Shown here: positions 10,361 through 64,000 of the stretch, piece after piece | Layout of the letters: each line of letters begins with the position of its first letter | How positions within the stretch are numbered: the first letter of the stretch is position 1 | NCBI RefSeq assembly: GCF_021869535.1 | Contig: NW_026262701.1 | Location: forward strand, 9,486,001 to 9,550,000 | DNA from: Mytilus californianus | Taxonomy: Eukaryota | Direction: 5' to 3' | DNA: 64,000 nucleotides | Position numbers and translations under genes: made by a program | Notes under the pieces: model-generated | Databases searched by the model: none | Told to the model about the DNA's origin: nothing | What the model saw: only the letters and a program-made list of their open reading frames with translations

Positions 10361-13300
10361 ATCTCGATTCATTAAAAATGCATATAATGAACTTATTTCA
10401 GGTACATAACAGTACATACAACAACATTCAGGTACAGTAGAAAAACAAAGCAAAATACAGAAATAAAATTCTTAATAAAAAAAATACTATTTCGTGTCAA
10501 AGAATGTTTTAAGTTACTATAAGCAAGCTCAAATTTCTCTATAAAAATAACAAAAAGGTGGTTATAAATGCCAACTTTCTACCAGAGTTCAAATGACGAA
10601 GAAAGAAGCAGTTATAGGTCGCCGTACGGTCTTCAACAATGGTAAAAACCCATACATGAAAAATGCGAAACAGTTCCAAACGTAAAAACTTACGGCCTAA
10701 TGTATACCCTTCCGGAGCACCTGATATCACTCCCATTTTTTGGTGGGGTTCGTGTCGCTCAGTCTTTAGTTTTCTATGTTGGGTTTTGTGTACTGTTGTT
10801 TGTCTGTTGGCTTTTCCTTTTTTTAGCCATGGCGTTGTCAGTTTATTTTCGACTTGAGTTTTATAGCAATACAATTTACTCATGACTTATAAAGTATGTT
10901 GCTGCGATAAACATGTCTGTATGCGCTCCATTCACCACCACCCCTTTTCCACCAACCTGAGACAGTGGCCGATATAAGACACATAGCACTCGCAGTTATT
11001 GTAAGATAGTTCAAAGCCAATTACATCTACATGTATTTAATAAATTATGTTCATAAAACACAATCAATACACAGAAGCAACGCATGTTGTATAAAGACGT
11101 CATACACAGTCGGAGAAACGCATGACTTTGTGCAAAGCCAAAATATAAGTAAACAGTATAGATAGGATGTAGGATCATGAGTACTAATAACTGTACATAT
11201 ATAGAAATATATATATTTAGTTATGTTTCATTTTTTCAAAAAACAAAATCTATGTTAGAGCCGATAACAACAATTGCCGGTGATAGAAAACCATGACGTC
11301 ACTGAAAATAGAAAATACTTGTGATAGATCATTGATATTAAATATAAAATTGCATTTCATATCGGTACATATCAGTTTGACGACTATTTCGAGGCCCTCC
11401 CCTAGGTCATGGTCCAGTGATTTTGAATTAATTAGCAATTTTCAATGTTATGTTTTCTGCGTAAGTCAATTTGATAAGAACTACTTGTGTTAGATCAAAG
11501 ATTTTTTGTATAAAGGTGCATTACTATCATTACATATGCCGACAGTGGAGACATATCTCTGTGTCAACAGTTTATTGTTAAATGAGTTGTTTTGTGTTTC
11601 TGAAAGAAAACGGAACCTGACATTCCATTCGACACTGTGTCATTGGTGATGTCGAGGTCGTCCCAGTCAGTATTCATGCTAATCGTCATAACTGAAATAA
11701 AATAATAAAAAGGAAAATTACATTTTTGCAACAATTTCGTCTTTCAGCAACTTTTACCAAGAACGTTTTTATCATAAAATGTATACACCGATATTTTAGT
11801 GTGAAAGACATTCAAACTTGATTTGAATACATACTGTACTAGAATATAATAATTTTATCATTACGAAAAGAAAATTACATCACAATCTTTACGTTTATTA
11901 TTATGTTAAGAACTTTAGGAAATATCGTTGTTATCTAATATTAGATCATGAATCAACAGAAATGATCAGCACCAATACTTTAGTCACACAAATTAACGCG
12001 ACAGAAAACTGCGTGGCATTCATAGAACATTTTGTTTGTAGTAAACAATCCGAAGGCGGAACCAGACTGAGTTATCAGCAATGTCAGGTGAACGGGGAAC
12101 TACATGCGATATATTCTATTTTAACGAGATTAAGATCGATGCCTTATTCTTCAACAACCCATATAGAAACATACAGGAAAAAAAGACAGAGACCATATTT
12201 TGTAATTTCAGTAAACGATTCGTTTTAAATGGAAAATGTTAATGTTGGATGTTATAAGAATTGTTCATGTTTTCATTTTAAGTAGTCAAACAACAATCAG
12301 GACAATTGGACCATATGGAGGAAAAAGAATTAAAAGTACAAATCTATAATACTAGTAGCATCTTTGTGTGGAGAGAAAATTCAATGGACAAGATTGGATG
12401 TCGCTTAATAAATTTTTTGTTAAATCTTTTAAAACAAAACATATCAGAGAATACTTGCAGTGAAAGAAAATGAGTTCTTAGTACATCGCTGCTAGTATGC
12501 AAATTATACAATGTATTTATCGGCGGTAAATAGATTGAAAACTGCAATGTTATTTTCAATTAAACTATGCAAGCAAGTACATAACAGTCCGAATATTATC
12601 TAAAAGCACGACAGAATAGTGTGGATAGCTATAATTATATTCCTGAATGATGGAAGAACGAAGTTTTTATCAATAATGAGTCATGGTCACTAAATGGTGG
12701 ATATATGAAAAGAATAAATTACGAAACTTGCAATACAAGCCGTATAAGCTTGCTCCATGGGAAAACAAATGATATAAAAATATCCAATTCCCAACTTTGT
12801 CTAATTTGATTTGACGTGAAGAACTGTACAATGTAAATTTCATTCAATTCGTTCAATTTTCAGAAGTTGGATTGCTTTCTCATCTTCTGCGACCTTTTTT
12901 TCATTCGCTCCTTAAAAGTGTGGTAATTTGTCTTTTAAATAATTACAGTTAATTTATTCTACGAAAGAAGGATGCAATACAAATTGACAAATGAACTTTT
13001 ATATAATATAATTTATAACGCGTGAGTTATCCCGGATTTTGATACAGATGATTCCAAGAATTTTAACATGATAGGTATAATTAATCAAGTTGCTTGTTTT
13101 TTTTTAATTTTAACAATGTGGGAATGATTTGAATTTTAACATGGTAGGAGTAATTGAATTTTAGCATTGTAGGAATGAAGCTACTAGTTTATTCGATGCG
13201 ATTTTTAGTATGGTAGGTATAATTAATTCAGTTGCTAGTTTATTTGATGAAATTTGTGAAGCTCCTACATTTAATATATGCTTTGAACACATATATATCT

Positions 13301-14086
13301 TTTAATTGTAATTCTTCGTCAATAAAAATAAATAAATTAATACTTAATGGCAATTAAGCTGCGAAGATTTAAAGTATATGACAACCAATAACATTGGTGA
13401 GTACACACAAGATTCGCATTCCGATCTAATAATTCAGTGAATCTCGAAGCCAAAATATTCAGGATCCCAAAACAATAGACAAAGGGTGCAGAATTGAAAC
13501 CACCGAAAAGACGACAAAGTTATAACGAGTAAAATGATTGAACTCTTCCAGTTACACGATTTAATCAAATGCAGATTAATGTTAGTAAAATTTAATATGG
13601 AATTATTTACATTTTTTAAGTTAACTTTTAAAAGAATTCCCGCAATCGGTGTCTTTAAGACGTTTGATATTCATGTATTTAATGGTTTGTCAACAGTGTC
13701 AGATTCCCTACTGTATATGTGCAATATGACGGTGAAACAAGGCGATTCCCCTCAAAATATTATCTCGAATCCATGTGCGAGAAACAACAAAATACCTCCC
13801 TCTGTTGATAACTCTGTTTTGCTGACCATTAGGAAATACAAAAGGATTTGATTTAATTACTTGACAGAATAGAAATCAACATTGTATATACATGTATATT
13901 TAAACAGTCATACTTGCAAATATGTTTTTTATTTGTTAGCAATCACATTGTAAAGACGCCCTCCAACAATAATAAATAAGTCCCGCTGCTCTCCTTCCAG
14001 TGCGAAGAAAACTGCGAACGATTCTTGCACTGCGTAACCATACAGATACATATACAGAAGTGGTTACACGCAGATAATACGACATT

Positions 14087-15492
14087 ATGGGTTTGTGTTC
14101 GTTTCAAACATGCCGATTCCGTGTTACAGTTCTACTGTGTATACTATTTATTCATCAGGTGATGACTGAAAACACAAACAAGATCCAATCAGCAAATAAA
14201 TCACCTCAACTGTCAGGTTATGTACTGAATAATATTTCTTTTTCTATCTTACAACCATGGCAACAGTTTTGTTATATAAATGAGTTACCAAAACAAGACA
14301 AACCCGGTGAATACTATATTGAGATTATCTGTAATGTCAACAGCAATGTTTTAAACTTTCTTGATTTTCGTCGCTTCACATCAAGAATTCAAGAAAATAT
14401 TTTATTTTCCGTTGTAATAACGTGTGGCCATAATGGAAGCGTTTTCTTTCCATACCCTGGCAGAGCACGTCTCCTCCATTCATTACGAATCTCAAATTGT
14501 GTTTTGAATGGATTTACATCCGAAGCAACATCTGATGTCATTGATTCAATACCGGATCGCATGAAATATTTCACTTTAATCAATTCAGTGATATTTTTGT
14601 CTCAAAATGATTTTAGACAGTTTCAGAGAGCAAAACATTTGACTAAAGCTTTTCAATGCGGTAATGTAAACGCTGTAAAAATAATTGAATACAACATTTC
14701 TTGCTGGATTGGTAATGCGAGTAAACGTGCGAGATTAGAAACCTATCAAACGCGACCTGATTTCCATGACCGCACCTGCACCTATAAATATCTTCGACAT
14801 TTGCAGAAAAGTTTTTCAATAATACAACCGTTTACTCGGCAGATTGATAAATCTATGTATCCTAATATTGAAATGCTCAACTTTAGTGCAGCCAGTATAA
14901 TAGAAACACCAAAACATGTTCAGGATTGGAGACTAGAATCAAAAGATTTGAAATATTTAGATCTCAGTCACAACTTAATAGAAGATGTGTTTCCTATAAT
15001 TTGTTATGATAGATACAACGATGATTCAACTGAAGGATTTGTAGATTTACGTTATAATAACATATCATCTCTCAGACTACATGGAGTAACGAGATGGTTT
15101 AGTGAAATTTGTGATAACCTAACGGTTGATATTCGAAATAATCCATTTTTGTGTGATTGTGGCGTAAAGCATTTTAAAGACCTTTTACAAAAATACGTTG
15201 GAAATCATATAGCATCTTCTTCTTGGTATATGCTTAGGCGAAAACAGATTTTTTCTCGTTATAAATATCTGTATGATCTTACATGCTACAATCCGCCTTC
15301 ACTGCGTGGGAGAATAATTTCTAAACTATCACTAAGTGAAATCGGGTGCAAGCCCAAATTACGAATAGTAACAAATGTTCCGACAGGGCCAATTATAGTA
15401 GTGATGTTTGTTAGTTTTTTTCTTTCTGTATGTCTTTTTGTTGGTATCAGATATCGAGAACAAATAGCTGTTAGCTGTAGTATGTGGCTAAA
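14087..15492 (+). CDS. TLR-ectodomain-like LRR transmembrane receptor without TIR (gene 1), main exon
   Basis: Open 469-codon ORF: signal peptide, Cys-containing N-region, LRRs (LKYLDLSHNLI, VDLRYNNI), LRRCT NPFLCDC...C, TM PIIVVMFVSFFLSVCLFVGI, then RYRE; the apparent stop lies inside a GTAAGT donor at 15493. Confidence 0.9.
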
Positions 15493-15612
15493 GTAAGTTC
15501 TAACTGTCGATCATAATATAATTACACGGTTGCTAAGAATACAAATGTGAATGAAATTAATTGAACTGATCAGACTTATGATCTTCTAATGGTTGGATTC
15601 CACAGCTTTTAA

Positions 15613-17133
15613 TCTTATATCACTATCACAGCAGTTACTGTAATGATAAACACATCGACATTCATTCTTTTCACTATCACAGCAGTTACTGTAATGATAA
15701 ACACATCGACATTCATTGTTTTCACTATCACAGCAGTTACTGTAATAATAAACACATCGACGTTCATTGGTTTCACTATCACAGCAGTTAAAGTAATAAT
15801 AAACACATCGACGTTCATTGTTTTCACTATCACTGCAGTTACTGTAATAATAAACACATCGACATTCACTATTTTCACTATCACAGCAGTTACTGTAATA
15901 CTAAACACAACGACATTCATTGTTTTCACTATCACAGCAGTTACTGTAGTAATAAACACATCGACATTCATTGTTTTCACTATCACAGCAATTACTGTAA
16001 TAATAAACACATCGACGTTCATTGTTTTCACTATCACAGCAGTTACTGTAATAATAAACACATCGACGTTCATTGTTTTCACTATCACAGCAGTTAAAGT
16101 AATAATAAACACATCGACGTTCACTGTTTTCACTATCACAGCAGTTACTTTAATACTTAACATATCGACATTCACTGTTTTCACTATCAGAGCAGTTACT
16201 GTAATAATAAACACATCGACGTTCATTGTTTTCACTATCACAGCAGTTACTGTAATAATAAACACATCGAAATTCACTGTTGTCACTATCACAACAGTTA
16301 AGTAATAATAAACACATTGACATTCACTATTTTCACTATCACAGCAGTTACTGTAATAATAAACACATCGATATTCATTGTTTTCACTATCACAGCAGTT
16401 ACTGTAATAATAAACACATCGACATTCATTGTTTTCACTATCACAGCAATTACTGTAATAATAAACACGTCGACGTTCATTGTTTTCACTATCACAGCAG
16501 TTACTGTAATAATAAACACGTCGACGTTCATTGTTTTCACTATCACAGCAGTTAAAAAAATAATAAACACATCGACATTCATTGTTTTCACTATCACAGC
16601 AGTTACTTTAATAATTAACACATCGACATTCACTGTTTTCACTATCACAGCAGTTACTGTAATAATAAACACATCGACATTCATTGTTTTCACTATCACA
16701 GCAGTTACTGTAATAATAAACACATCGACATTCACTGTTTTCACTATCGCAGCAGTTACTGTAATAATAAACACATTGACATTCATTGTTTTCACTATCA
16801 CAAACACATCGACATTCATTGTTTTCACTATCATAGCAGTTACTGTAATAATAAACACATCGACATTCATTGTTTTCACTATCGAAGCAGTTACTGTAAT
16901 AATATACACATCGCCATTCATTGTTTTCACTATCACAGCAGTTACTGTAATAATAAACACATCGACATTCACTGTTTTTACTGTCACAGCAGTTACTGTA
17001 ATAATGAACACATCGACATTCACTGTTTTCACTATCACAGCAGTTACTGTATAATAAACACATCGACATTCATTGTTTTTACTATCACAGCAATTACTGT
17101 AATAATAAACACATCGACATTCATTGTTTTCAC
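15613..17133. repeat. 51-bp minisatellite, about 30 copies, in the predicted intron of gene 1
   Basis: Unit CACTATCACAGCAGTTACTGTAATAATAAACACATCGACATTCATTGTTTT. Confidence 0.97.
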
Positions 17134-18027
17134 CGAATAGTCGATCTTATATGTATACCACATAGCCAACAATGGCATGTCTTACCTAGTTTTGAATGCA
17201 TTTGTTATCTCTGGTACAATCATTTATTTTACAAAGACAAATACATTATCGAAACCCTGTACTCATGTGTCCCTGGGCTATATATTACACATATAACACA
17301 ATCCACATCACAGCTATCATGCATGATTACAAAAATGTAACTCGAAATGCGTGCTTTGAACGAGTTGTAATTTCTTTTTTTGTTTTTTTTTTGTGATTTT
17401 TTATGTTATCTAAAAAAAAACTCCAAGCATTGAGATACATAGATATAAACATTATATATAATATAAGTATTAATATGAAATTTTGTTCGATAGCTGTCTA
17501 AAGCTAAAATGTTTACATTTCTTTGTTAATAACAATATAAAAATAAAGAGATGTGGTATGATTGCCAATGAGACAACTATTCATTGAAGTTCAAATGAAG
17601 TGGATGTAAGCAATTATTGGCAACCGTACGACCTTCAAAAATGAGAAAAACCCATACCGTGTTTTCGAATATAAAAGGCCCCGACATGAAACATATGAAA
17701 CAATTCAATTGAAAAAACTAACAGCCTAATTTATAAAAAAAATCATTTACGAAAAACAAATGTGACAGACATGAACCAACGACAACAACTGAACTACAGG
17801 CTCCTGATCTTGAGACAGGCACATAAAGAATGTAGCGTGGTTAAACATGTGTGTGTGCGCTCAACCCTCCGCAACCAAGATTGCTCCGCTGTAGCGAAAT
17901 GTCTCCTAGCTGCCGCTGTGTAAGTGAGGGAAGACATGTACAGTATATATAGAGTTGTATAACAGTAACATAAATTATATTATAAAATGTATTTAGGGCT
18001 TTTGTATTTGTTGTTGTTATTCAATAG

Positions 18028-18118
18028 GCACACATGGTGTAGTTGTGGTACAATAAACGAAATAACTACTCCCGTGAAAATGATCGAATCAAAGTTATTG
18101 TACAATGTGGCAAACTAG
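18028..18118 (+). CDS. Predicted exon 2 of gene 1 (short cytoplasmic tail (K)HTWCSCGTINEITTPVKMIESKLLYNVAN*)
   Basis: T-rich tract plus CAATAG acceptor at 18027; the phase-2 join with the 15492 donor gives the longest frame; conserved in paralog 35360-35429. Confidence 0.55.
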
Positions 18119-18344
18119 ATATGACGGAAGTCAGTCTGACCAAGTATGAAAGCTTTCTGAAGAACAATATGAGAGGATTGGGTCCAAGAGGTGTCATAGT
18201 GGTACGATAGTCCAAACACGGTACAAGTCCCATGAATCTTGTAAAATGGTTAAATAAAGTGGAGAGTAAAACGGTCAACTACACAAAGAAGGATCCTACA
18301 AGTCTAAATGCTTTCTGTAAAACGCCATCAGTGTTACCAATTAA

Positions 18345-18755
18345 ACTTATCACAGATGCCAGGATTAAAATTGTATACGCCAGATGCGCGTTTCGTCTAC
18401 AAAAGACTCAATGATATGATCATAATTATAAATTAACTGCTTACAAAACTTATATTTTTTTCGAAATACTAAGCATTTTCTACTCCAGGAATAGATTGCC
18501 TTAGAAGAGAGGCGAAAGATACCAGAGGGACATTCAAACTCATAAATCGAAAATAAACTGACGACACTATGGCTAAAAAAGAAAAAGACAAACAGACAAA
18601 CAATAGTACACAAAATACAACATAGACTAAGCAACACGAACCCCACCAATCACTTAGCTGTGTTTGGCAAAACTGTTCGAAATTTAGGTCCTCAATGCTC
18701 CTCAACTTCGTACTTTATTTTCCCTTTAAAACTTTTTTTTGATTTGAGCGTGATG
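18345..18755. ncRNA. Degraded hammerhead-ribozyme retrozyme remnant, interrupted by a family B copy
   Basis: Minus strand GAGTCTTTTGTAGACGAAACGCGCATCTGGCG (core CTGATGA damaged); body matches 28750-28900. Confidence 0.6.
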
Positions 18756-19514
18756 TCACGCTCTGAAATTACATAATAAAGTATTAGACACAACGAATAA
18801 AAATTACGTTACACTTGTAAGATTGACCAAGTTATAGGGATATCAGATGCTATATTAGAATTGATTTGGTTAATTAAATGCTGCATGTAACAATTTCCAC
18901 TTCTATTCTATTTTAACTTTATGTGCAGGAGTTAAGAAACATACAGAGTATTTTTCTATAATTTTGTATCCAATATTTCAAATATTCTATCCCACCATAT
19001 TTTGTGGGCAAAATGTTCTTACATCTACACTTGTATATATAGTATATAAATAGCAACACAGTATTATTTACTGTTTTACTGCTATCAAAAACCTCAGACA
19101 AACCAAAAATGATTTCTTTTTGTGCTTAAAGGTAGGAAATGACATATTAATCCAGTCTATCATGGATACCCAGAAATTTTGAACAACATTACATTCCCAA
19201 AAAGTAAAATATATTTCTCTGAAATCTGAACAAAAAATAAGTAGTTCATTTTTTTTTTATTTGCATCTATATAAAAGCGAATTACATGATAGAATCCTAT
19301 GAACAATCCTAGAATGGAAACTTCTGGTTATTATAAAAGGCATGTAGTAAATAGTATTCCAATCTTCAATCTGCTTATATATTTCCCATTTATTACGGGA
19401 AGATAAAGCCAATTCTTTATCATCTTTCAAAAATATTTTTTTTAGCATTATCTACCAATTTATTTTCCAACACAATTCTACCTTCTATCATAATTTTCAA
19501 TCTATTTAAGGAAT

Positions 19515-19812
19515 GATTGTAATATTTTTTCTAGAAATAACATCAAAATGTGATGCACACTGAATAACCCGCGTAGCTTGTTATCTAAAAGTGTCCACCA
19601 CATTTTTAAGGTTACTTCGAATAGACAGAAAAACTATTACAGTTTAAACTATTCATTCCTTATAATCTAATTCTAAATTCAATTTTTAAGGAGTAAATTA
19701 TGAAAAAACATTAATGACGTCACGGTCACATGACAAAATTATGTCTATGAGCTGATAGACAAAAAACCTTTCAGCCAATCAGAAGACGTGTTACATCCAA
19801 AATTAAATTATT
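19515..19812. mobile_element. Unclassified non-autonomous element with an internal hairpin
   Basis: Inverted repeat AAAATGTGATGCACAC...GTGTCCACCACATTTT at 19545-19606; resembles a common bivalve interspersed repeat. Confidence 0.45.
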
Positions 19813-20343
19813 TGGAATTGCACTAATAATACCATAAAACTCCACAAAATTATTATTGATTTTATACTTTCTTGAAAATTCCTCTTATGAAAATAATGTA
19901 TTATTTTCTGACACCTGATCATTATTAACAAATACACACTTTCTGAAATACTTGACCTTCAAGATGATCTTGCCATCTTGCTTTATAAAAATTGTAAATC
20001 CGAAACATCCAACCTTTTCATATGACTTCATAAATATGTCAAAGGGTATATATCATATGTAAATGTACGACAATTGTGTGTGAATATTTTACTAGACTGG
20101 CATATGAAGCGATTTTAATGAGCTAGTTCAACGGTTATTTGTTTTCTTTCAATTGTTTTATATATACGCGAAGTTTCGAATCTTTGATCGATGGAAGAAC
20201 AAATCATATTTTAAACATCAGCCGTTCTTATTCGTAACCTCTATTGGTCGTTTTTAGTTCAAGTACACTCAGGTTTGAAATCGCTTTTCTGAGAACTTGC
20301 TCTTGCACACACTATTAATAACATTAACGGTATCAATTTTACT

Positions 20344-20392
20344 GTACCAGATGCACATGTCGACAGTTATTGTCTTTTCAGTGATGGACGAG
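20344..20392 (-). ncRNA. Degraded type I hammerhead-like motif
   Basis: Reverse complement CATCA-CTGAAAAG-ACAATAACTGTC-GACA-TGTGC-ATC-TGGTAC; both core boxes carry substitutions. Confidence 0.45.
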
Positions 20393-21299
20393 GCCATACT
20401 ATTTGAAATCCAAAACTTAATACAAACGTTGAACAGCTGATAAAACGGTCTTTGTTACTTCTATATAATAGAGAGTTGATAAAAATCATCACGTTTGTCT
20501 CCGAACCTAGTTTGAAGTCATCATCAGTGCACTTTTTTGAAATGTTTGAAATAGGAAGAAAAACAACTTCCACTTGTATCTCTGATTCCAGGTACAGAGG
20601 GCACTAGTCTTTAAAATGGTATATTGGTGACAAGAAAACTGTACCTGTATTTTAAATTTTTTTTTTCTTATAAATGAAACTGTGTATAAATAGGAGCAGT
20701 CTACGATATATGATTTTACGATGGGGTATAGAAGTGTTCTGTGTAGAGAAGTCGAAAGTTTTGATATTTTGTAAGGTTATTAATGGCCATTTTTGGCCCA
20801 ATCTCAAAACTTTCACTTTTTAGGGATTTTCTGGTGGAGAGAATAATTAAACATCATTGAAATGATAATAATGATAGCAAAATAAGGAGATGCGGTATTA
20901 CTGCCAATGAGACAACTCTCACCAGAGAACAAATGACATAGACGTTAACAACTATAGGTCACCATACGGTCTTCAACAATGAGCAAAAACCATACCACAT
21001 AGTAAACTATAAAAGGCATCGAAATAACAAATGTTAAACAATTCATGTATATGCATTTATTGTATAACAATACATTTATGGATACGAAAGTTATGAAATA
21101 ACAGAAAAATGCTTTTAGATGTCATTTTTATTAAACAAAAATCATAAAAAGAAACAAAAAATGAGGATTTCTTGGATTTTTATGATGCGTTTCTTGTATA
21201 CCATTACAGTTAATAAACAATACCAAACTTACCAAATAACAGAAAAATGCATTCAGAGGATAGAGACCACATGTAACCATGTTGTTGGGTTTTTTTTTA

Positions 21300-21390
21300 G
21301 TTTTTGTAATGCCCCCACCTCTAGACGAAAAGGGCGTAAAGTGTTACCCTTGACCGTCCGTCCTTTCGTCTATCCGTTCTTCAGTCCGTC
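21300..21390 (+). mobile_element. Helentron/HINE-like 5' end fragment
   Basis: T-tract, GCCCCC...GGGC hairpin, then a (GTCC)-type microsatellite. Confidence 0.45.
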
Positions 21391-23419: not shown

Positions 23420-23590
23420 GTTATCTATTATGACATCAGACTCTGACTTCTTTTGAATTGAGTTTTACTGTGCGTATTGCTGGGTGTTTGTTTTTTCTAC
23501 ATTGGCTAGAGGTATATATTTTTGCGCCAGTCCCAAGTCAGGAGCCTCTGGCCTTTGTTAGTCTTGTATGATTTTTAATTTTAGTTCATT
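23420..23590 (+). repeat. Fragment of an abundant mussel-type interspersed repeat
   Basis: CTACATTGGCTAGAGGTATA...GTCCCAAGTCAGGAGCCTCTGGCCTTTGTTAGTCTTGTATG. Confidence 0.6.
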
Positions 23591-27255: not shown

Positions 27256-27309
27256 ATATGTTTTATAGTTTAGTATGATGTCCATTTTCACTGAATTACT
27301 GCACATTGA

Positions 27310-27460
27310 TGTTTAGGGGCCAGCTGAAGCTCGCCTTCGGGTGCCCAATTTTCTCGCTGTGTCGACGAAGACCCATTGGTGGCCTTCGGCTGTCTTCTAC
27401 TCTTTGGTCGGGTTGTTGTCTCTTTGACACATTCCCCATTTCCAATCTCAATTTTATTTA
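27310..27460 (+). repeat. Short interspersed repeat (GGGGCCAGCTGAAG...GACACATTCCCCATTTCCAATCTCAATTTTATT)
   Basis: GC-rich block that I recognise as an abundant mussel repeat; single copy in this window. Confidence 0.5.
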
Positions 27461-28980: not shown

Positions 28981-29139
28981 TTATACTAAATATCTTCTGT
29001 TGTTATAATGAACAGTACAGGAAGACCTGATATTGTGCAATGCTTAAAATAATTCTATAAACTTATATTTAATTTCTGTCACGATTTTACCGTAAAATAT
29101 ATGTTGCTAGAATAGTTGATCACAAGATCTCACGATAAG

Positions 29140-29310: not shown

Positions 29311-29923
29311 AAAGAAAAAGAATGGCGGAGCTACAGCTATCATTATAACCATAAAATAACAAAACTTTCTACATAATGAAGTTTATTATTTCACCAATTT
29401 CTTCCGGAAAATACAAAGGTATATGTTATAAGCTATCTTATTTTCGTTTAGTAGCAATTAAGGTAAAAAGGAAATTGTCAAGGCCATTGAAGGGGAGATC
29501 ACCTGATGCTTATTATTCCTTTCTTTAACAGATTGTATATAAGTGATCCAGGATTCTCTTTACACAGGTAAAGAAAGTACTGATCATGTTTAGTTGGAAA
29601 ACTCAATTCTTTAAAAACGTAAGTTTTTGGTAGACAAGTGCAAAATTATGTATTAATTTCTTAATTGTAAAAAATGTATAATGACCTCGAAGATATTTGG
29701 ATAGAAGTCGATTTTCAGGAAATATGTTTAATACAAAGAAAACAACTTTATAATTATGATACTACAACGTATGATAAATATTTCTGACAAATAAATGTCA
29801 ATTGTAAAATAAAACTATTCAATTTGCAAAAATATGATTTTTTTTTCAGAGACAATTCGTATAGCTGAATTTGCAAAGTCATTCATATTACTGCTTTTTG
29901 CTTTAAGACTTAACAACGATATC

Positions 29924-31365
29924 ATGTTCCATATGAATAGTTGTCAACAATTTCCAAAAAGGATCTGGCTTATTTTCATCGTGATGTTTGTGACATTAGT
30001 CCAATACACTAGTACAGACAAAAACGATACAAGTATTGAAAATGAACCTCTAGGGCATGCGGAAAATAATGGAATTAAAGAAACAGAGGTGATTTCTAAA
30101 ACATTGGTACACAATGAGAGTTTGTTCTCTTTGCCTAGTTCTTGGCAAGATATTTGCTATGTAAACAAAAAAATAAATACAACTGTTACATTGAGAAAGC
30201 ATATGGAAATTATATGTAACGTTGCTGGAAGTAACAGTATAAACTTTCTAGACTTTCGTAATTTCACATCCAACATTCAGGAAAATGTATTATTTTCTGT
30301 TAACGTAAAATGTGGAAACGGCGGAGGTATATTCTTCCCGTATCCTGGACGAGCACGCCTTCTCTATTCTTTACATATATCACACTGCATTTTGTCTGGG
30401 TTTCGATCTGAAATTAGAGATTTTTCAATAGACTCAATACCAGACGATTTAAAGTACTTTAGATTAAAAGATTCGGTTGTCCTTACATCCATTAGAGATC
30501 TTTACGCCTCTGTTGATCCACAAGAAGTTACAAAAGCGTTTGAATGCGGTCCTTTAAACGCAATAGAAATAACGGAATCTAACCTGACGGATTATTTTAT
30601 AGATTTGTCGTCAATACCATTCTCGCCGGATACTGTCATGGAAAAGAATGTTGATTATCACAGAGAAAATAGTGATACGTCTTTCAGATGTAAATATCCT
30701 CATCTTCGATATTTGGACAAAAGTTTTTCTCTTGGATTAGATCGCCAACAGTTGAATAAAAAGTTTCAGAACTTGTTATACCCTGTTGTAGAGGTAATGA
30801 ATTTTTCCCACTGTGGCATCAGTGAGATACCGGTACAGCTTTATGACTGGAGACTTTTCAGTAGAAAACTGAAAATTGTAGATCTTAGCCATAATAAAAT
30901 ATCAGATCTTGGTTCTTTTACGTGTCATAGTAATGCAGACGTGACCGAAGGCATTTTTGATTTGCAATTTAATAATATAACAACAGTGAAGTTACGTAGT
31001 CTGACTACAATATTTCGTGACATGTGTAGTCAGTTAACGGTAAATATTCGGAATAATCCATTTGCCTGTGATTGTGAAATCAAAGACTTTTTCGGCTTTC
31101 TAGATAGAGGCGATTATACAAATATCGCCCGCTATAGATATTTATCGGATTTCACTTGCTACAATCCATCTTCACTGCGGGGGAGAATAATTTCTAAACT
31201 ATCACTAAGTGAAATAGGGTGCAAGCCAAATTTACGAATAGTAACAAATGTTGCGACAGAGCCCATTATAGTAGTGGTGTTTGTTAGTTTTTTTCTTTCT
31301 GTATGTCTTTTTGTTGGTATCAGATATCGAGAACAAATAGCTGTTAGTTGTAGTACGTGGCTAAT
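29924..31365 (+). CDS. TLR-ectodomain-like LRR transmembrane receptor without TIR (gene 2), main exon
   Basis: Open ORF 29834-31369. The start is more likely 29924 or 29933 (signal peptide RIWLIFIVMFVTLVQYTS; TTTTCAG acceptor at 29849). LRRs, NPFACDC, TM, and a GTAAGT donor at 31366. Confidence 0.88.
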
Positions 31366-31561
31366 GTAAGTTCTTACTGTCGATCATGATATAGTTACGC
31401 TAGATATCGAGAACAAATCGCTGATAATGGTAGTACTTGGCTAAAGTAAGTTCTTACTGTCGATCATGATATAGTTACGCTAGATATCGAGAACAATTCG
31501 CTGATAATGGTAGTACTTGGCTAAAGTAAGTTCTTACTGTCAATCATGATATAACTACGCG
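31322..31561 (+). repeat. 80-bp triplication of the exon end and splice donor of gene 2
   Basis: AGATATCGAGAACAA...GGCTAA(T/A)GTAAGTTCTTACTGTC...TACGC x3; donors at 31366, 31446 and 31526. Confidence 0.92.
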
Positions 31562-31644
31562 GTTGCTAAGAATGGAAATGAAAATGACATTTATTATACT
31601 GATCAGACTTTTAATATGTTTATTGTTGGATTCCCCAGCTTTAA

Positions 31645-31950
31645 ATCCTATTTCACAGTAGTTACTGTAATACATCGACATTCAATGTTTTTATTATCAC
31701 AGCAGTTACTGTAATAATAAACACATCGACATTCACTGTTTTCACTATCACAGCAGTTACTGTAATAATAAACACACCGACTTTCATTGTTTTCACTATC
31801 ACAGCAGTTACTGTAATAATAAACACATCGACATTCATTGTTTTCACTATCACAGCAGTTACTGTAATAATAAACACATCGACATTCATTGTTTTCACTA
31901 TCACAGCAGTTACTGTAATAATAAACACATCGTCATTCATTGTTTTCACT
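31645..31950. repeat. 51-bp minisatellite, about 6 copies, in the intron of gene 2
   Basis: Same unit as 15613-17133 at the paralogous position. Confidence 0.95.
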
Positions 31951-31997
31951 GAATATTCAATCTTATATGTATCCCACATAGCCAACAATGGTATGTC

Positions 31998-32230
31998 GTT
32001 GTCAATATAACGGAATTTGTTGCGACTGTCATACAAGTGAGAGGTTTAGCTAGCTTTAAAACCAGGTTCAATCCACCATGTTCTACTTGAGAAAATGCCT
32101 GTACCAAGTCAGGAATATGACAGTTGTTATCTATTCGTTTGATGTGTTTGAACTTTTGATTTTGCCATTTGATTGGGGACTTTCCTTCTTGAATTTTCCT
32201 CGGAGTTCAGTATTTTTGTGATTTTACTTT
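31998..32230 (+). mobile_element. Dispersed repeat family C insertion (233 bp)
   Basis: Absent at the paralogous site ATGTC|TTACCTAG (about 17181); other copies at 41262-41460, 44290-44470 plus 49248-49300, and 50880-50990. Confidence 0.85.
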
Positions 32231-32515
32231 TTACCTAGTTTTGAATGCATTTGTTATCTCTGGTACAATAATTTATTTTACAAAGACAAATACATTATCG
32301 AAACCCTGTACTCATGTGTCCGTGGGCTATATATAACACATATAACACAATCCACATCACAGCTATCAATCATGACAACAAGATTGTACCTCGAAATGCG
32401 TGCTTTGAACGAGTTGTATTTCTTTGTTAATAACAAGATTGCTCTGTCGTGACGAAATGTCTCCAGTCGCTGTGTAAATGAGGAAAGCCATTGCGTATAC
32501 AGTATATATAGAGTT

Positions 32516-35285
32516 CACTAGTAACCAGAATTAAGATTGATCGGCCAAAAAGGTATTAACCCTATTTAAAAAGATTACTGAATATTTAAATAATATTGAC
32601 AAAAAATTAAAACTTTTTTTTTCAATTTATTTTAATCCATTTCAAATCATTTTAATACCAGTCAAATAGATTCCCTTGCAGTCATTTAAGTAATTAACTG
32701 ATTTACATTTGCGCGCATTTGTGGATTAAAATTTGTTACGTTTGCGCGTAGCTTTTGATTACATTTGCACGCATTCATTTTACAGGTAACACAGGTAAAA
32801 CATAAACATCATTCATAATGATTTGTATGACTATAGTTATGATGAATTTTGAAAATACTTGTAAATTTATTATATATTTTTCATATTGAATTCTCAAAAA
32901 TTATAAAGTGACCATGAGAAATCCCGTAATAGCTTAACACAAACATGTAACTTAATATCCATAATTGAGAAACCCGTAATAGTTTAAGGTAATCATTTAG
33001 CTTCATTACGAATATTTCATAGGGATTGTATTTTGTTTCCTGATTTTACCGAAAAGTGATCGCTTTAGTAAATAATTTGTCAGTTTGTAAAGCTGCGTCA
33101 AAGCACAAGAATGGGGTTTCGTTTGTGACTAACAAATCGCAGCCGGGGGGATTATAGTATAGATGGATTTACTTTCCGTATCAACAGAACACTTATGCCA
33201 AGGGATATTTCACGGCTATGTACCGTAAAGAATTGCAAAGATAGGATAAAAACTTATCAGTATTCAACAGTCTATCAAAATGATTTTAGAAAATTGAGAG
33301 GCAGATTATCCGTGCAGTTGTAAAGAGAAAAGCTTCAACCGACATAACTACTAGGCCTATGAAATTAGTATTTACCTGAGTTTACCTGTAAAATGTAATC
33401 AAAAGCTGCGCGAAAACGTAACGATTTTTACGCGCAAATGTAATGCATAGATCCTTAGTAATAGATGATGTTTAATACACATGATTTACGTTATCGTTAT
33501 TTATTTCTCAAACTGTCGCGTGAGTTAATAATGAATTTGAAAAACATACAGCTTGGGTGGATATAAAAAAAAACGTAAAGAAGATTTGTTATGCACGTTC
33601 CGTCAAGGATTTGTATAGTGTATCTAAAATCCTTGGTTCGTTTATTGATTTTACTTCTTATTTGTATTTATCTATAGTTATATACGATCTAGCCCAGGAA
33701 CACAGTTAATTCATAATACAGAATTCAATGGGGACTAGAGGGCATACGCACCCCTACCCCCGTTTCATTGGAAAACATCTTTTTGTTTTGCGTATCGACA
33801 GAACACTTATGTAAAAGGATATTTCACGGCTATGTACCGTAAAAAATTGCAAAGACAGGACAACAACTTATCAGTATTCAACAGTTTATCTAAATAATTT
33901 TAGAAAACTTGAGAGGCAGGTTATCCGTGCATTTGTTAAGAGAAAAGCTTCAACCGACATAACTTGTAGGCCTATGAAAATAGTGTTTACCTGTAAAATG
34001 AATGCGCGCAAACGCAACAGTGTTTACGCGGAAATGTAATACATAGATTCTAAGTCCTAGAAGATGTTTAATACACGTGATTTGCGTTACCGTTATTTAT
34101 TTCTCAAATAAGTCATTAACTCCTTTTAATTGTGAATATTTGTTGGTGATATATCATCTGACTAAAATCGATAAGGTTTGGAAAGGATTGACGATAGATA
34201 AACGGGGTTGTTTTTCTGCTTGAGTGATTTACCTAAAAAAAGGCGGACACTTTAAAGTTCAAAAGGACTTATAGTGCCTAAACAATCATTTTACCTGGCG
34301 TAGCCGTGCGTAAAATGTATTTCGGCATTTCTTTTCAAAAAATGATTTGTTAAATGGAATAAATCGTCGGATTGTAAACTTTGTCTTTTTTGTCCGGAAT
34401 AAGCTATTAAAAAAATAATGTACGTGGAAAATTTTGTGAAAAAATTAGGAGTTGCAATTCTTACCTTTCATACCTTTAGTTTCATTGATAAAAATTAATT
34501 TTGACTCGTCCAGTGTCCAGTTTGAATGTCAATTAAGTTACTGTACACATTCATGCATGTTCTGATTTAATCAATATACGTGTATGATGAAAAACAAACA
34601 GTTCGCAGGTAAACTACTGGGTAGGGAGAAAATGACAGATATTTTAAGTTATTTTTTTTTGCTCAAACAAAGAAAATTTGTCAACCAAAACTTTTGCTAT
34701 AATTTCAAAAGCATGTCGTTCTGTATTGGTATATTTTTTGGATCTTTCATTTACGTATTTAAGGCAATAGAAAGTTTGGGCTGCAAAAGAGGGACATAAG
34801 ATACCAGAGGGACAGTCTAACTCATAGATCGAAAACAAACTGACAACGCCATGGCCAAAAATAAAAAGACAAACAGACAAATAATAGTACAGATGACACT
34901 GCAAAAGTCTACATAATTATTGACTTTATACAGAAAACGCGTCCTTTCAAAACATTTAATGTTTCACAAATAATACATGGATACAAAGTAAAATCATATC
35001 CCAAAACACTGCAAAAAAAATCATTCTGATTGGTATAGTGGTATTGTCATAAAGTGTGTTGAAATGAACCATGGTATAGCAAACATCGAATTCCCTCATA
35101 AAATGTTATCACACACTATAATACCAGTTTGATTTCGTTCAACGGGGGCATGGTTAATTAGTTTGACGTAGCTTAACCATATCTTAAAATAACTTAAATG
35201 ACTGCAAGGGAATCTATTTGAGTAATCTTTTTTAAATAGGGTTAATACCTTTTTGGCTGATCAATCTAAATTCTGGTTACTAGTG
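32516..35285. mobile_element. Non-autonomous CACTA (CMC/EnSpm) DNA transposon, 2770 bp
   Basis: Termini CACTAGTAACCAG...CTGGTTACTAGTG with TIRs over 60 bp; 3-bp TSD GTT; empty site AGAGTTGTAT at 17951-17960; internal about 350-bp duplication (33170-33520 and 33790-34110); no transposase seen. Confidence 0.93.
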
Positions 35286-35359
35286 GTTGTATAACAGTAA
35301 CATAAATTACATTATAAAGTGTATTTGGGGCTTTTGTATTTGTTGTTGTTATTTAATAG

Positions 35360-35429
35360 GCAAACATGGTGTCATTGTGGTACAATAAACGAAATAATTG
35401 ACATAGTCCAACAACTCCCGTCAGAATGA
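35360..35429 (+). CDS. Predicted exon 2 of gene 2 ((M)QTWCHCGTINEIIDIVQQLPSE*)
   Basis: TAATAG acceptor at 35359, phase-2 join; paralogous to 18028-18118. Confidence 0.55.
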
Positions 35430-35929
35430 TCGAATCAAAGGTATTGTACAATATAGCCAACTACATGACGGAAAACAGTCTGACCAAGTATGAGAGCTTT
35501 CTCATGAACAATCTGAGAGGATTGGGTTCAAGAGGTGTTATAGTGGTACGATAGTCCAAATATAGTTCAAGTCCCTTAAATCTTGTAAAATGGTTAAATA
35601 AAAAAACAAATCAGTGCAATACGGTCAACTACACAAAGATGGAAAAAAGCCTATCATTGTAAATGCTTTCTGTAAAACGCTATCAGTGTTACCATCAAAC
35701 TCATCATAGATACTAGGATTAAAATTTTGTACGCCAGTCGCGCGTTCGGTATTCTATTTCTTGGGTTGAAAATCCTTAGTATTGTGTAAAATTCTAGTTT
35801 TTGTAGACAGTTAATTTATAATTATGATCATATCAATGATAAGTCAGGATACCATGATAAAAATTTTGAACGCCAGACTTTTGCAAAAGACTCATTAGAG
35901 ACACTCGAATCAAAAAAGTTAAAAAAGTC

Positions 35930-54488: not shown

Positions 54489-56331
54489 ATGTACTTAAAA
54501 CTACTTACTACTTGTAATATATTAGTTACTGGACTTTGGTTAATATTAAATTTAATCAAACTGACAAGACGAACTGAATTCTTCAGATTGGAGTATCAAT
54601 TTGAAAACCAATGAACAAATCGGTTTAATGAGCATTTCATTTAAACCTACTGAAATTTTGAAAAGGTTTGAAAGCATAGACAACTGGAACAGTTCCTTTA
54701 ATATTTTACAAAAAGATAACTCTATGTTGAGAATATTTTGTCTTGTTCATCATGTTCATGGTGGAGCCAATCTAAAGTTTTCAGAATTTAGGAATTTCGC
54801 AGTACGGTTACCCTCTTCATATCTAATTGACTTGAATGTTATCTGTGTTGGTGGATACGTTAGGTTTCCTTGGCCATTTAGAGCTCACAAACTCAAAAGG
54901 ATTTATATAAAATACTGTGTAATACGAGAATTTCGTCGAGAATTTAAAGACAACGCTTTTGATAGAATTCCAGATGCATTGCAATACGTACAAATAGAAA
55001 ATGCAACACTTATTGTTACTGTGAAAGAGCCAGCTGAGTCACTAGCTAAATCGGATAGCCCAATTACAAGAGCTGCTGAATGTGGACCAGAGAATGCTAA
55101 GATTATAATTCAAAGAGGAATATCTATAGAAATTAAAGAAGATCCTGATGAGTGGAAACAATTCAATAATAATACTTTCTACAACAATAATTTAAATATC
55201 CAAAAGACAAAGTGCATTTTTAAAAATCTTGACACGTTTGAAATAAGTGGTAGTAGGAGCTTGGGAAAAAATAAACTCAATAAAAACTATACACAGACAT
55301 TGCACTAAATCTCAAAGTGTTAAATTTCTCTAATAATGGATTGACTGACACCATATATAAGTTTGACAGCTGCTGGCGGGAACATTTTCCAGTCATGGAG
55401 TTTTTAGATTTCTCCAACAATCAGATGCAATCAATTCCATATATAAAAGATAATGGAATGGTTTGGAACAAGACATTGTCAGTCGGAATAATAGATATCA
55501 GACGGAATAAAATTACGTTCCTCACAAAGGAAGTACTTGATTCATTTTCATCCCACAAATTTGTTATGGTCGATATTAGAGAAAACCCATTTCGGTGTGA
55601 CTGTGGAACAATTGAGGTATTCAAGTATCTTTCTACCAAGACCATGTCAAAATCTTATGACTACTTCAGGTCCTTAGAGTGTGCAAGTATAATAAGCGTT
55701 AGCGGAGGTAAAATGTCAAGTCTATCTATCAATGACTTAAACTGTAGAAAAATAACGGTCGTAAATATTCCAGCCATCGTACTCAGTATTGTAACAATAA
55801 CAATAATCATATCTGTTGTTCTAATAATATATTTCAGAAATCTGATCAAATTTATTTCATTTACTCGACTAGGTATCAGGTTCGCATGTAATGTTTCAAA
55901 TTACGCGAAAGAGGACAGAGATTATGACGCGTGAGAAGGATGTCGACTGTGTTTTGCAATCGGCTATTCCTATGTTAGAAACAGCAGAAACTCGAAAAAC
56001 ATTTAGATTGTGCCTTCATCATCGAGATTTTGAAAAAGGTGAAACGATTGCAAATAACATCATCAAACGTGTTGAGAATAGCCATCAAACTATATTAATG
56101 ATTTCAAACAATTTTTTCAAAAGTAAATGGTGTATGATGGAGTTCAGAACGGCTTTACAGAAAAGTTTACAGGATAAAACCCGTCATCTGATCTTGATAA
56201 TGAAAGATATTGTCACCAAGGATAACATTGATTCCGATCTTAAAACCTGCATTCATTGTCTTACATATTTTGATATAAGAGATTTCTTGTTCTGGGACAA
56301 ACTGAAATACGTAATGTCATTCAGGCAATAA
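54489..56331 (+). pseudogene. Toll-like receptor (LRR-TM-TIR), three frameshifts
   Basis: Ectodomain homologous to genes 1 and 2 (FSEFRNF, FPWPFRA, DRIPD, AAECGPEN), NPFRCDC, TM, TIR (LCLHHRDF..G..IANNI, FFKSKWCMMEF, FWDKL); shifts at about 54560, 55282-55286 and 55932. Confidence 0.88.
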
Positions 56332-62829: not shown

Positions 62830-64000
62830 GTTATGTCTAGATGATTTTGCATATTTCAGCCTGTCCCAAAATAACACATTTTTAATTTTAAGATAGGTAT
62901 GAGTATTGAAACAATTTTTCAAATCAGGATCAACATGATCCAAAAGTTATATTACTTTTCAACACAATTATTAAATGACGACCTTTATCTTGTAAGCTTT
63001 TCCTCAAAGCCGTTCGAAATTCCATCATGCACCATTCACTTTTCAAGAACACACTGGATATAAGTAAGATGTTATAATAGCTATTTTCAACACTGTTGAA
63101 TATATTATCAGCTATAGTATTACCAACTACAAAATCTCTATGATGAAGACATAGGTGCATGCTTTCCCAGCGTCTATTGACTCCAGATTTGGAAAAGCTA
63201 TACGTATAACCAAGTCAACATCTTTCTCGCTGTAGGCAATAAATGCATCATAGTCTTTCTCTTCGTTTATGTCATTTCTAAATTCACATTGACAGTTTGT
63301 ATTGAGTCGAGTAAACAAAATAACCTTGATCAGATTTCTGAAATAGATTGTCAACAAAGTTATGACGAACAATGTAATTGTTATGATGCTCATAACGACT
63401 ATTGGAAAATGTATGACAGTGTCCTTGTTACAGATAAGTTCTGTAAATAAAGGCAACAGTAGTAAACCGCTGTTCGAAATTCATAAATCGATTGAGAAAA
63501 AACAAATCCGGGTTACAAACTCAAACTGAGGGAAACACATTAAGTATAAGAGGAGAACTACGACACAACAGAAACACAACATTAAAATGTAACACACACA
63601 GAAACGAACTATAATAACACAATGTAAGAGAGAGAGACGGACGTTTGATAGATTTGCACACTCCAGCGAACCGAGGTAATCATAAGCTTTTGGCATAGTC
63701 TCTGAAGATAGATATTCAATTACTACAATTATTCCACAGTCACATAAGAACGGATCCTTAGTGATATCGACTTTAACAAATTCGTGAGTTGAGAACGAGT
63801 CTATCATACCTTTTGTTAATGAAGTTTTATTATTACGCCGTAAATCTATTACTACTACTGATTTTGTCTTTTCGAGGTCATTCCGTAATCTCGTATCAAA
63901 GGAAGGACTTATATGTTATTATTGGAAAAGTCTATATATTCCATCAATGGGAATCGTAGTCGCCAGCCTTGTAGTTTATACAAAGTGTCAAACATATCAT
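62830..64000 (-). pseudogene. Toll-like receptor (LRR-TM-TIR), 3' part; stop, frameshifts and a repeat insertion
   Basis: MEYIDFSNNNI*, IDLRRNN, DPFLCDC, TM, DYDAFIAYSEKD, LCLHHRDF.VG..IADNI, FLKSEWCMMEF, FWDRL; extends beyond the window. Confidence 0.88.
63447..63622 (+). mobile_element. Family D repeat inserted in the LRRCT-TM junction of the minus-strand TLR
   Basis: TGTAA duplicated at 63442-63446 and 63623-63627; homologous to 29140-29310. Confidence 0.8.

What the first reader, a model, noticed from the sequence alone, without database searches (positions are those of the whole stretch)
14087..18118. TIR-less TLR-like receptors whose apparent stop is a splice donor: candidate decoy receptor pair
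Genes 1 and 2 share their unusual short ectodomain (FLDFR.F, FFPYPGRA, DSIPD, KAF.CG, about 3 LRRs plus LRRCT) with the TIR-bearing TLRs at 54.5 and 63 kb, but have a different TM and no TIR. In both, the stop codon overlaps AA|GTAAGT or AT|GTAAGT, and a conserved downstream acceptor (18027; 35359) gives a phase-2 exon encoding a 23-30 aa tail with a conserved TWCxCGTINEI motif. The TIR exon portion seems to have been replaced by an intron plus a new Cys-containing tail, possibly palmitoylated. These would be inhibitory or decoy partners, or co-receptors, derived from a TLR within one cluster.
Basis: partly seen in the sequence, partly recalled or inferred. Interest (0 to 1): 0.7.

Follow-up and report, generated by a model that had tools for sequence, protein, structure and literature searches.

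The report
TIR-less mussel TLR relatives; no spliced tail
Two mussel genes encode Toll-like-receptor relatives that stop just after the membrane anchor and lack the signalling domain; the second got that ending by swapping in the first gene's 3' end, and the proposed hidden splice to an extra tail is not supported.

Summary
Both ORFs are real (14087-15496, 469 aa; 29834-31369, 511 aa). Each encodes a signal peptide, an LRR/LRRCT ectodomain, one TM helix and a 15-aa cytoplasmic stub, with no TIR. The TAA stop does sit inside GTAAGT.

The 469-aa form with the same stop is kept in M. coruscus and M. galloprovincialis (M. edulis copy: 472 aa). dN/dS is 0.38-0.55 overall and 0.15-0.22 for the LRRCT/TM part. 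A spliced transcript exists in a close relative. Gene 1 is therefore most likely a functional TIR-less TLR derivative.

The "stop = donor + Cys tail exon" idea is not supported:
- The tail is no better conserved than its non-coding flanks.
- Its reading frame differs in all three copies.
- The tail region is missing within 10 kb downstream in M. coruscus and M. galloprovincialis.
- One M. galloprovincialis copy has lost GTAAGT and reads through.
- An RNA contig of a relative runs straight through the stop at about exon depth.
- Comparable acceptor-plus-ORF sites are common downstream.

New result: gene 2 is a clean chimera. Up to 31151 it matches a collinear, intact 660-aa TIR-bearing TLR in the public M. 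californianus assembly. From 31159 it carries gene 1's LRRCT-end/TM/stub/stop cassette plus several kb of flank. A decoy or co-receptor role is inferred, not tested. Another note of this scan (s1-279601) flagged the identity boundary.

The parts
13128..13212 (+). 5'UTR exon of gene 1 (at least this much)
   Evidence: A 1509-nt contig of run X1 joins 13212 to the main exon. The donor GT is at 13213.
13213..13940 (+). 5'UTR intron (GT..AG)
   Evidence: The joint is in the X1 contig. The 36 letters reported between the two sides match 13941-13976. The acceptor AG is at 13939-13940.
14087..15496 (+). Gene 1 coding sequence, 469 aa: signal peptide, LRR/LRRCT ectodomain, TM (about 15386-15448), 15-aa stub RYREQIAVSCSMWLK, TAA stop at 15494-15496
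   Evidence: ORF. Orthologues are 93/80/77% identical with the same end. dN/dS is 0.38-0.55. The model has a TM helix at residues 433-455.
15493..15498 (+). GTAAGT overlapping the stop; a sequence-level donor with no evidence of use
   Evidence: Sequence. It is conserved in L001 and L002 and lost in L004. An RNA contig of X1 reads through it.
15257..18495 (+). Cassette copy 1: end of LRRCT, TM, stub, stop and about 3 kb of 3' flank, shared with gene 2
   Evidence: blastn segments match 31130-35840 at 83-94% identity.
15620..17133 (.). 51-bp minisatellite, about 30 copies; each unit contains AATAAA; lies in the 3' flank or UTR
   Evidence: Tandem Repeats Finder. It accounts for the long repeat ORFs.
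18028..18118 (+). Proposed tail exon of gene 1 (30 aa); not supported as coding
   Evidence: Sequence. It is 95-97% identical to L003, the same as its flanks. The frame is not kept in the other copies. It is absent from L001, L002 and L004.
29834..31369 (+). Gene 2 coding sequence, 511 aa (478 aa from the Met at 29933); a chimera
   Evidence: ORF. Before the breakpoint it is 91% identical in protein and 95.5% in DNA to the M. californianus TLR; after it, 89% and 92.6% to gene 1.
31152..31158 (+). Recombination breakpoint inside the LRRCT (LSDFTC|YNPS)
   Evidence: Informative sites switch from 'like the M. californianus TLR' to 'like gene 1' between 31151 and 31159. An X1 RNA contig carries the same junction.
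31130..35840 (+). Cassette copy 2 (gene-1-type 3' end and flank), lengthened by insertions
31322..31560 (+). 80-bp unit repeated three times in tandem, covering the last 44 coding bases, the stop/GTAAGT and 33 bases of flank
35360..35429 (+). Proposed tail exon of gene 2 (23 aa); not supported as coding
   Evidence: Sequence. A 14-bp insertion relative to copy 1 shifts the frame after TINEI.
54601..56331 (+). TIR-bearing TLR paralogue with two frameshifts (frames 1, 3, 1)
62830..63998 (-). TIR-bearing TLR paralogue with two frameshifts, running off the window end

Best explanation
Gene 1 is a Mytilus-specific, TLR-derived type I membrane glycoprotein. It has a signal peptide, an LRR/LRRCT ectodomain of about 400 aa, one TM helix and a 15-aa cytoplasmic stub, and it ends at a genuine TAA stop. 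What follows the stop is 3'UTR or flank with a 51-bp minisatellite, not an intron leading to a coding tail.

The protein has no TIR, so it cannot recruit TIR adaptors itself. It most likely acts at the cell surface as a ligand-binding, non-signalling partner of TIR-bearing paralogues, either as a decoy/negative regulator or as a co-receptor, in the way RP105 or IL-1R2 do. This functional step is inferred.

Gene 2 acquired the same ending by ectopic recombination or gene conversion. A TIR-bearing TLR kept its own ectodomain up to the LRRCT (to 31151). It then received the gene-1-type LRRCT-end/TM/stub/stop cassette with several kb of flank, and lost its own TM and TIR.
For: Shown:
- The ORFs exist and have no TIR.
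- They are homologous along their whole length, including the TM and the RYR..xL stub, to 36-46%-identical TIR-bearing proteins.
- The 469-aa form with the same stop context is conserved in M. coruscus and M. galloprovincialis, and as a 472-aa form in M. edulis.
- dN/dS is 0.38-0.55 overall and 0.15-0.22 for the 3' part, at dS up to 0.29.
- A spliced transcript (5'UTR intron 13213-13940) of the orthologue exists in run X1. A 315-nt contig runs 15335-15614 and beyond, through the stop, at depth 8.55 against 10 for the exon. No run shows a loose end at 15492.
- M. galloprovincialis copy L004 lost GTAAGT and the stop, and is modelled as one exon reading 28 codons into the flank.
- The tail region shows no excess conservation, and its frame differs in all three copies.
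- The tail region is absent within 10 kb downstream in L001, L002 and L004.
- Chance acceptor-plus-ORF sites are frequent.

For the chimera:
- M. californianus locus L003 is collinear with window 17677-31152 and carries an intact 660-aa single-exon TLR with a TIR.
- The breakpoint is sharp, at 31152-31158.
- The same junction is present in an RNA contig of another organism.
Against: - No expression evidence comes from the window's own species. The one raw-read RNA run (X21, about 6% of it read) gave 0 reads, which the tool calls no test.
- The read-through contig comes from a relative, probably M. coruscus, whose locus lacks the tail region. It therefore does not test the 18027 acceptor.
- GTAAGT and the about 20 bases after it are strongly conserved in three loci. 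This could reflect occasional use as a donor.
- An ectodomain dN/dS of 0.4-0.6 shows only moderate constraint.
- The decoy or co-receptor function is pure inference.
- How gene 1 first lost its TIR is unknown. No relic of TIR coding follows the stop.
- Whether L003 is an orthologue, an allele or a paralogue of the window's locus cannot be told, because the window's source is hidden.
Confidence: 0.7

Rival explanations
1. One reading: the stop is bypassed because GTAAGT is used as a phase-2 donor. Transcripts then join a downstream exon (18028-18118; 35360-35429) that encodes a Cys-containing TWCxCGTINEI tail.
For: - The donor matches U1 well, and plausible YAG acceptors follow T-rich tracts.
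- The motif and acceptor are also present in the M. californianus copy, where the tail would read HTWCNCGTINE then stop.
- GTAAGT plus the next ~20 bases are conserved in M. coruscus and M. galloprovincialis.
- No RNA reads from this species were obtained, so the model is not directly excluded.
Against: - The tail is no better conserved than its flanks: 95-97% in every 100-bp bin from 17877 to 18476.
- A 1-bp deletion in M. californianus and a 14-bp insertion in copy 2 give three different tails and stops, while nucleotide similarity continues well past all three stops.
- The region is absent within 10 kb downstream in three loci of other species that keep the ORF.
- L004 has lost the donor.
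- An RNA contig reads through at about exon depth, and no run shows a loose end at 15492.
- 42 comparable acceptor-plus-ORF candidates lie in 14.3 kb.
Confidence: 0.1
2. One or both genes are non-functional remnants of TLRs that still have open frames. This applies especially to gene 2, a recent recombination product sitting in a cluster of decaying TLRs.
For: - The neighbouring TLRs at 54.6 and 63 kb are frameshifted.
- Gene 2's ectodomain dN/dS against the TIR-bearing counterpart is 0.61.
- Its 3' end carries an 80-bp triplication.
- No reads were found in X21.
- No gene-1-type protein from the annotated M. californianus genome appeared among the hits.
Against: - For gene 1, 469 codons stay open in several species at dS up to 0.29, with dN/dS 0.15-0.55, and a spliced transcript exists in a relative.
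- For gene 2, 478-511 codons are open, although the cassette dS of 0.17 against gene 1 points to an old event. The same junction is transcribed in another organism.
Confidence: 0.17
3. The gene 2 chimera is an assembly artefact: two paralogues were mis-joined at the shared LRRCT region.
For: The junction lies where two paralogous sequences meet, in a repeat-rich region.
Against: - Sequences on the two sides of the junction are only about 55% identical between the parental types, so there is no long shared repeat to collapse.
- An independent RNA contig from another organism spans the junction with 1 mismatch in 30 bases.
Confidence: 0.03

Closest known systems
RP105 / CD180 (vertebrate TIR-less TLR4 paralogue)
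   Same: It is a type I membrane protein with a TLR-type LRR ectodomain, one TM and a very short cytoplasmic tail without a TIR. It modulates signalling of a TIR-bearing relative (own knowledge; papers PMC1887709 and PMC8369417 were listed but not read). RP105/MD-1 structures are among the fold hits.
   Different: The origin is independent and Mytilus-specific. Sequence identity is only about 14% and TM-score about 0.27. The ectodomain is much shorter (about 400 aa). No MD-1-like partner is known, and the function is untested.
Decoy receptors of the IL-1R/TLR superfamily (IL-1R2, soluble TLR2/4, fish TLR5S)
   Same: The ligand-binding ectodomain is kept and the TIR signalling domain is missing. 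They derive from signalling paralogues (review PMC3705552, listed but not read; own knowledge).
   Different: The mussel proteins are membrane-anchored, and the stub is fixed in the genome rather than produced by alternative splicing or shedding. In gene 2 the TIR-less state was acquired by transfer of a 3' cassette from a paralogue.
Expanded bivalve TLR repertoire (Saco et al. 2023, PMC10279657)
   Same: The genes lie in a tandem TLR cluster of a mussel. Their closest TIR-bearing relatives (P0007-P0013) are single-exon TLRs with the same ectodomain motifs (NFLDFRNFTS, FFPYPGRARLL, KAFECG).
   Different: In my term search that survey did not mention TIR-lacking, truncated, decoy or pseudogene TLR derivatives. 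These genes fail the TIR criterion.

Membership tests
Toll-like receptor (canonical) | Extracellular LRR domain with a C-terminal cap (LRRCT) | tested here: met
   Full-length homology at 36-46% identity to TIR-bearing TLR proteins, with a conserved NPFxCDC...C LRRCT. Pfam LRR hits are only near or below threshold. The fold search hits LRR ectodomains including TLR3/7/8, Toll and RP105, at low TM-score.
Toll-like receptor (canonical) | Single transmembrane helix, type I topology | tested here: met
   A hydrophobic stretch GPIIVVMFVSFFLSVCLFVGI is followed by RYR (sequence). The model has a helix at residues 433-455 and an N-terminal hydrophobic helix.
Toll-like receptor (canonical) | Cytoplasmic TIR domain | tested here: not met
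   Pfam finds no TIR in either protein. No TIR-coding DNA lies between 15.5 and 54 kb on either strand. No relic of one follows the stop.
RP105/CD180-type TIR-less TLR homologue | TLR-like ectodomain, TM and a short tail without a TIR | tested here: met
RP105/CD180-type TIR-less TLR homologue | Orthology or sequence relationship to vertebrate CD180 | tested here: not met
   There is only generic LRR fold similarity (14-16% identity, TM-score 0.25-0.27). The nearest sequence relatives are Mytilus TLRs.
RP105/CD180-type TIR-less TLR homologue | MD-1/MD-2-type secreted partner and modulation of a TIR-bearing TLR | not testable with these tools
   This needs co-expression or binding assays.
Decoy receptor (functional class) | Binds the ligand or partner of a signalling receptor without signalling | not testable with these tools
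   It is inferred only from the architecture. For gene 2, the ectodomain is 91% identical to that of a TIR-bearing counterpart.

The most novel reading that the evidence does not exclude
A portable 'LRRCT-end/TM/stub/stop' cassette from a conserved TIR-less gene converts signalling TLRs into TIR-less receptors by ectopic recombination. Mussels would then hold TIR-plus and TIR-minus versions of the same ectodomain, as alleles or as close paralogues. Gene 2 and the M. californianus P0013 gene are such a pair, 91% identical up to the breakpoint. They would be natural dominant-negative or decoy pairs that tune individual TLR specificities.
Probability: 0.3. Interest if true: 0.65.

Novelty: new variant of a known kind. 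Interest (0 to 1): 0.4.

Why it matters
Bivalves have the largest TLR repertoires known, but how so many receptors are regulated is unclear. Two things here make a negative-regulator or co-receptor layer testable in mussels. One is a conserved, lineage-specific TIR-less TLR derivative. The other is a second gene that became TIR-less by receiving the first one's 3' cassette while a near-identical TIR-bearing version exists.

These genes supply matched TIR+/TIR- ectodomain pairs for reporter assays. They also illustrate how recombination within immune gene clusters can switch a receptor from signalling to non-signalling in one step. The specific claim of a hidden splice and a palmitoylated tail should not be carried into annotations.

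Tried and rejected
1. Relic TIR coding sequence after the stop. I suspected that the M. galloprovincialis read-through tail (PCYNFT...) resembled the PCQNYET...YDAFIAY linker of TIR-bearing paralogues. Local alignment of the 130 bases after the stop against the M. californianus linker/TIR start scored below the shuffle mean (743-804 of 1000 shuffles did as well). Rejected.

2. Exact-sequence look-ups of the gene 1 and gene 2 proteins in public assemblies found nothing on record.

3. Raw RNA reads of the presumed source species (X21) gave 0 reads on 12600-15614, which is no test. I kept the reads stretch short of 15615 because the tool turns away long repeats and the 1.5-kb minisatellite starts at 15620. 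The 15492-18028 joint could therefore not be looked for directly, only loose ends and read-through at the donor.

4. A simple unequal crossing-over model predicts a full copy of the 18.5-29 kb spacer after gene 2, followed by an intact gene. The shared block ends near 35840, so a patch transfer, or later deletions, fits better.

5. The structure prediction was only moderate (pLDDT 65, pTM 0.49), and the fold search was generic for LRR proteins. It adds no specific ligand or partner clue.

6. The literature term searches found no description of TIR-less TLR derivatives in Mytilus. This is absence within the held library only.

7. The tail peptides were searched alone in a local tblastn, including the residue of the split codon.
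Full report
**What is there**

The window is AT-rich mussel DNA; the best protein hits are all Mytilus. ORF 14087..15496 (469 aa) and ORF 29834..31369 (511 aa, probably starting at the Met at 29933) exist as described. Both proteins have:
- a hydrophobic N-terminus;
- an LRRCT (NPFxCDC...C);
- one TM segment;
- a 15-aa basic stub (RYREQIAVSCS.WL.).

Pfam gives only borderline LRR hits and no TIR. An AlphaFold model built on a 12-sequence alignment is moderate (pLDDT 65). Its best PDB matches are generic LRR ectodomains: NGL-3, 5T4, RP105, TLR3/7/8 and Toll. tblastn with the TIRs of the neighbouring genes finds TIR-coding DNA only at 55.9-56.3 kb and 62.8-63.2 kb. Genes 1 and 2 therefore have no TIR exon anywhere downstream in the window.

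**Relatives**

Gene 1 has 469-aa counterparts in M. coruscus (93% identity) and M. galloprovincialis (80%), and a 472-aa one in M. edulis (77%). They end at or next to the same residue.

The nearest TIR-bearing proteins are 36-46% identical. They align through the TM and into the stub: RYRKEIxILAYTRL aligns with RYREQIAVSCSMWL. The TM is therefore homologous, not new. The TIR-bearing relatives are single-exon across this point (L003 ORF 9086..11116), so no 'TIR exon' was replaced.

Selection on gene 1:

| Comparison | dN/dS | dS |
|---|---|---|
| vs M. coruscus, whole gene | 0.55 | 0.059 |
| vs M. galloprovincialis, whole gene | 0.38 | 0.29 |
| LRRCT/TM/stub part | 0.15-0.22 | - |

An open 469-codon frame at that divergence, in AT-rich DNA, argues for a functional gene.

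**Is the stop a splice donor?**

The sequence facts are right. GTAAGT overlaps TAA in both genes, and YAG acceptors at 18027 and 35359 open phase-2 ORFs that share TWCxCGTINEI. The supporting argument, conservation in two genes, fails for the following reasons.

1. The two genes are one observation. blastn shows the genes are alike at DNA level only from 15257/31130 onward. That similarity runs on through the flank:

| Gene 1 side | Gene 2 side | Identity | Content |
|---|---|---|---|
| 15257-15525 | 31130-31398 | 91% | exon end and first flank |
| 15620-17133 | 31672-31950 | - | 51-bp minisatellite |
| 17182-17377 | 32231-32425 | 94% | flank |
| 17954-18392 | 35286-35746 | 83% | 'tail' region |

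2. No coding signature. A three-way alignment with the M. californianus copy shows nucleotide similarity continuing unchanged far beyond all three stops. M. californianus has a 1-bp deletion, giving HTWCNCGTINE then stop. Copy 2 has a 14-bp insertion, giving a different tail after TINEI. Per-100-bp identity to M. californianus is 95-97% from 17877 to 18476, with no peak at the 'exon'.

3. Missing in other species. In the M. coruscus locus (L001), two M. galloprovincialis loci (L002, L004) and 10 kb downstream of each, the tail region is not found even with word size 7 or tblastn. The ORF is kept in all three, and the stop context GGCTAAAGTAAGTTCT is kept in L001 and L002.

4. Donor lost in one copy. 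In L004 the stop and GTAAGT are deleted. The NCBI-listed model there (P0006) is a single exon that reads 28 codons into the flank. The M. edulis protein ends ...KWFSSNC, a different ending again.

5. RNA evidence. Contigs of run X1 carry a GT..AG intron in the 5'UTR (13213-13940), so they are transcripts. They cover the coding exon at depth 10. A 315-nt contig then runs 15335-15614 and 35 bases further, straight through the stop/GTAAGT, at depth 8.55. No run shows a loose end at 15492. About half of X1's differences from the window match M. coruscus L001 (18 of 34). X1 is therefore probably M. coruscus, not the window's species.

6. Base rate. In the 14.3 kb after gene 1, 42 YAG sites with an equal or better pyrimidine tract open a phase-2 ORF of at least 23 codons. 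Thirteen of these lie outside the minisatellite. 30% of all YAG sites do so.

What remains in favour of the donor is its good consensus and the conservation of the about 20 bases after it in three loci. The only raw-read RNA run of the presumed source species gave no reads at all, which is no test. I put the tail model at about 0.1.

**Gene 2 is a chimera**

The locus of the M. californianus 'protein toll-like' P0013 (L003, GCA_021869535.1) is collinear with window 17677-31152 at 89-95% identity. It includes the gene 1 'tail' region at its start. It carries an intact single-exon 660-aa TLR with a TIR.

Similarity of gene 2 on either side of the breakpoint:

| Part of gene 2 | vs M. californianus TLR (protein / DNA) | vs gene 1 (protein / DNA) |
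|---|---|---|
| before the breakpoint | 91% / 95.5% | 43% / 55% |
| after the breakpoint | 43% / 55% | 89% / 92.6% |

Informative sites switch cleanly between 31151 and 31159, inside LSDFTC|YNPS. About 74 of 82 favour the TLR before the switch, and about 107 of 113 favour gene 1 after it.

The same junction sequence occurs in an RNA contig of X1 with 1 mismatch in 30 bases, joined to cassette sequence. The chimera is therefore not an assembly artefact, and it is transcribed in a relative. The cassette dS of 0.17 against gene 1 exceeds the 0.06-0.07 seen in the cross-assembly comparisons. Either the event is old or the donor was another gene-1-type copy.

The window's source is hidden, so I cannot say whether L003 is an orthologue, an allele or a paralogue. 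Other notes of this scan call the genome the California mussel; I did not check this. If they are right, the TIR+ and TIR- versions coexist within one species.

**Mechanism proposed**

Shown:
- the architecture;
- conservation of gene 1;
- transcription in a relative;
- the true stop in annotated or read-through models;
- the chimeric origin of gene 2.

Inferred: the proteins sit in the membrane, bind ligand or pair with TIR-bearing paralogues, and cannot signal. They would then act as decoys, negative regulators or co-receptors, in the way RP105 or IL-1R2 do. The stub Cys (AVSCS) could be acylated, but this is speculation. How gene 1 first lost its TIR is unknown; no relic of TIR coding follows the stop.

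**Comparison and novelty**

These genes fail the defining TIR criterion of TLRs. They are functionally closest to RP105/CD180 and to the decoys of the IL-1R/TLR superfamily, but of independent, mussel-specific origin. The large bivalve TLR survey (PMC10279657) did not mention TIR-lacking derivatives in a term search. I rate the finding a new variant of a known kind. Interest is moderate: the eye-catching splice/tail claim falls, while the cassette-transfer origin of a second TIR-less receptor is a tidy and testable piece of immune-gene evolution.

**Limits**

- It was kept clear of the minisatellite, so the 15492-18028 joint was not tested directly.
- There is no expression evidence from the window's own species.

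Noticed in passing
They are probably pseudogenes, or carry assembly indels.
   Followed up: partly
window 15620-17133 and 31672-31950: A 51-bp minisatellite sits in the shared 3' flank, with about 30 copies after gene 1 and 5.5 after gene 2. Each unit contains AATAAA. It produces long spurious ORFs on both strands.
   Followed up: partly
window 31322-31560: An 80-bp unit spanning the last 44 coding bases of gene 2, its stop/GTAAGT and 33 bases of flank is repeated three times in tandem.
   Followed up: no
window 3436-7491 (-): ORFs resembling protein-primed family B DNA polymerase (a Polinton/Maverick-like element), interrupted by an N gap at 4532-4685. Another note of this scan (s1-279512) covers it.
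   Followed up: no
P0001 (M. coruscus, same 3.3-Mb contig as P0002): This 683-aa annotated protein is a gene-1-type ORF fused to a second partial copy running from MNFSAAS to the stub. M. coruscus therefore has tandem partial duplications of the same cassette region.
   Followed up: no
L003 9086-11116 (M. californianus): The public model P0013 (371 aa) starts at an internal Met, although the genomic ORF is open for 660 aa from MNSCQQ, including the whole ectodomain.
   Followed up: partly
window 17534-17869, 18500-18650, 20863-21045: Dispersed repeats have several copies in the window (9.4-9.7, 38.8-39.1, 59.0-59.2, 60.6 and 61.5 kb). They flank the shared cassette.
   Followed up: no
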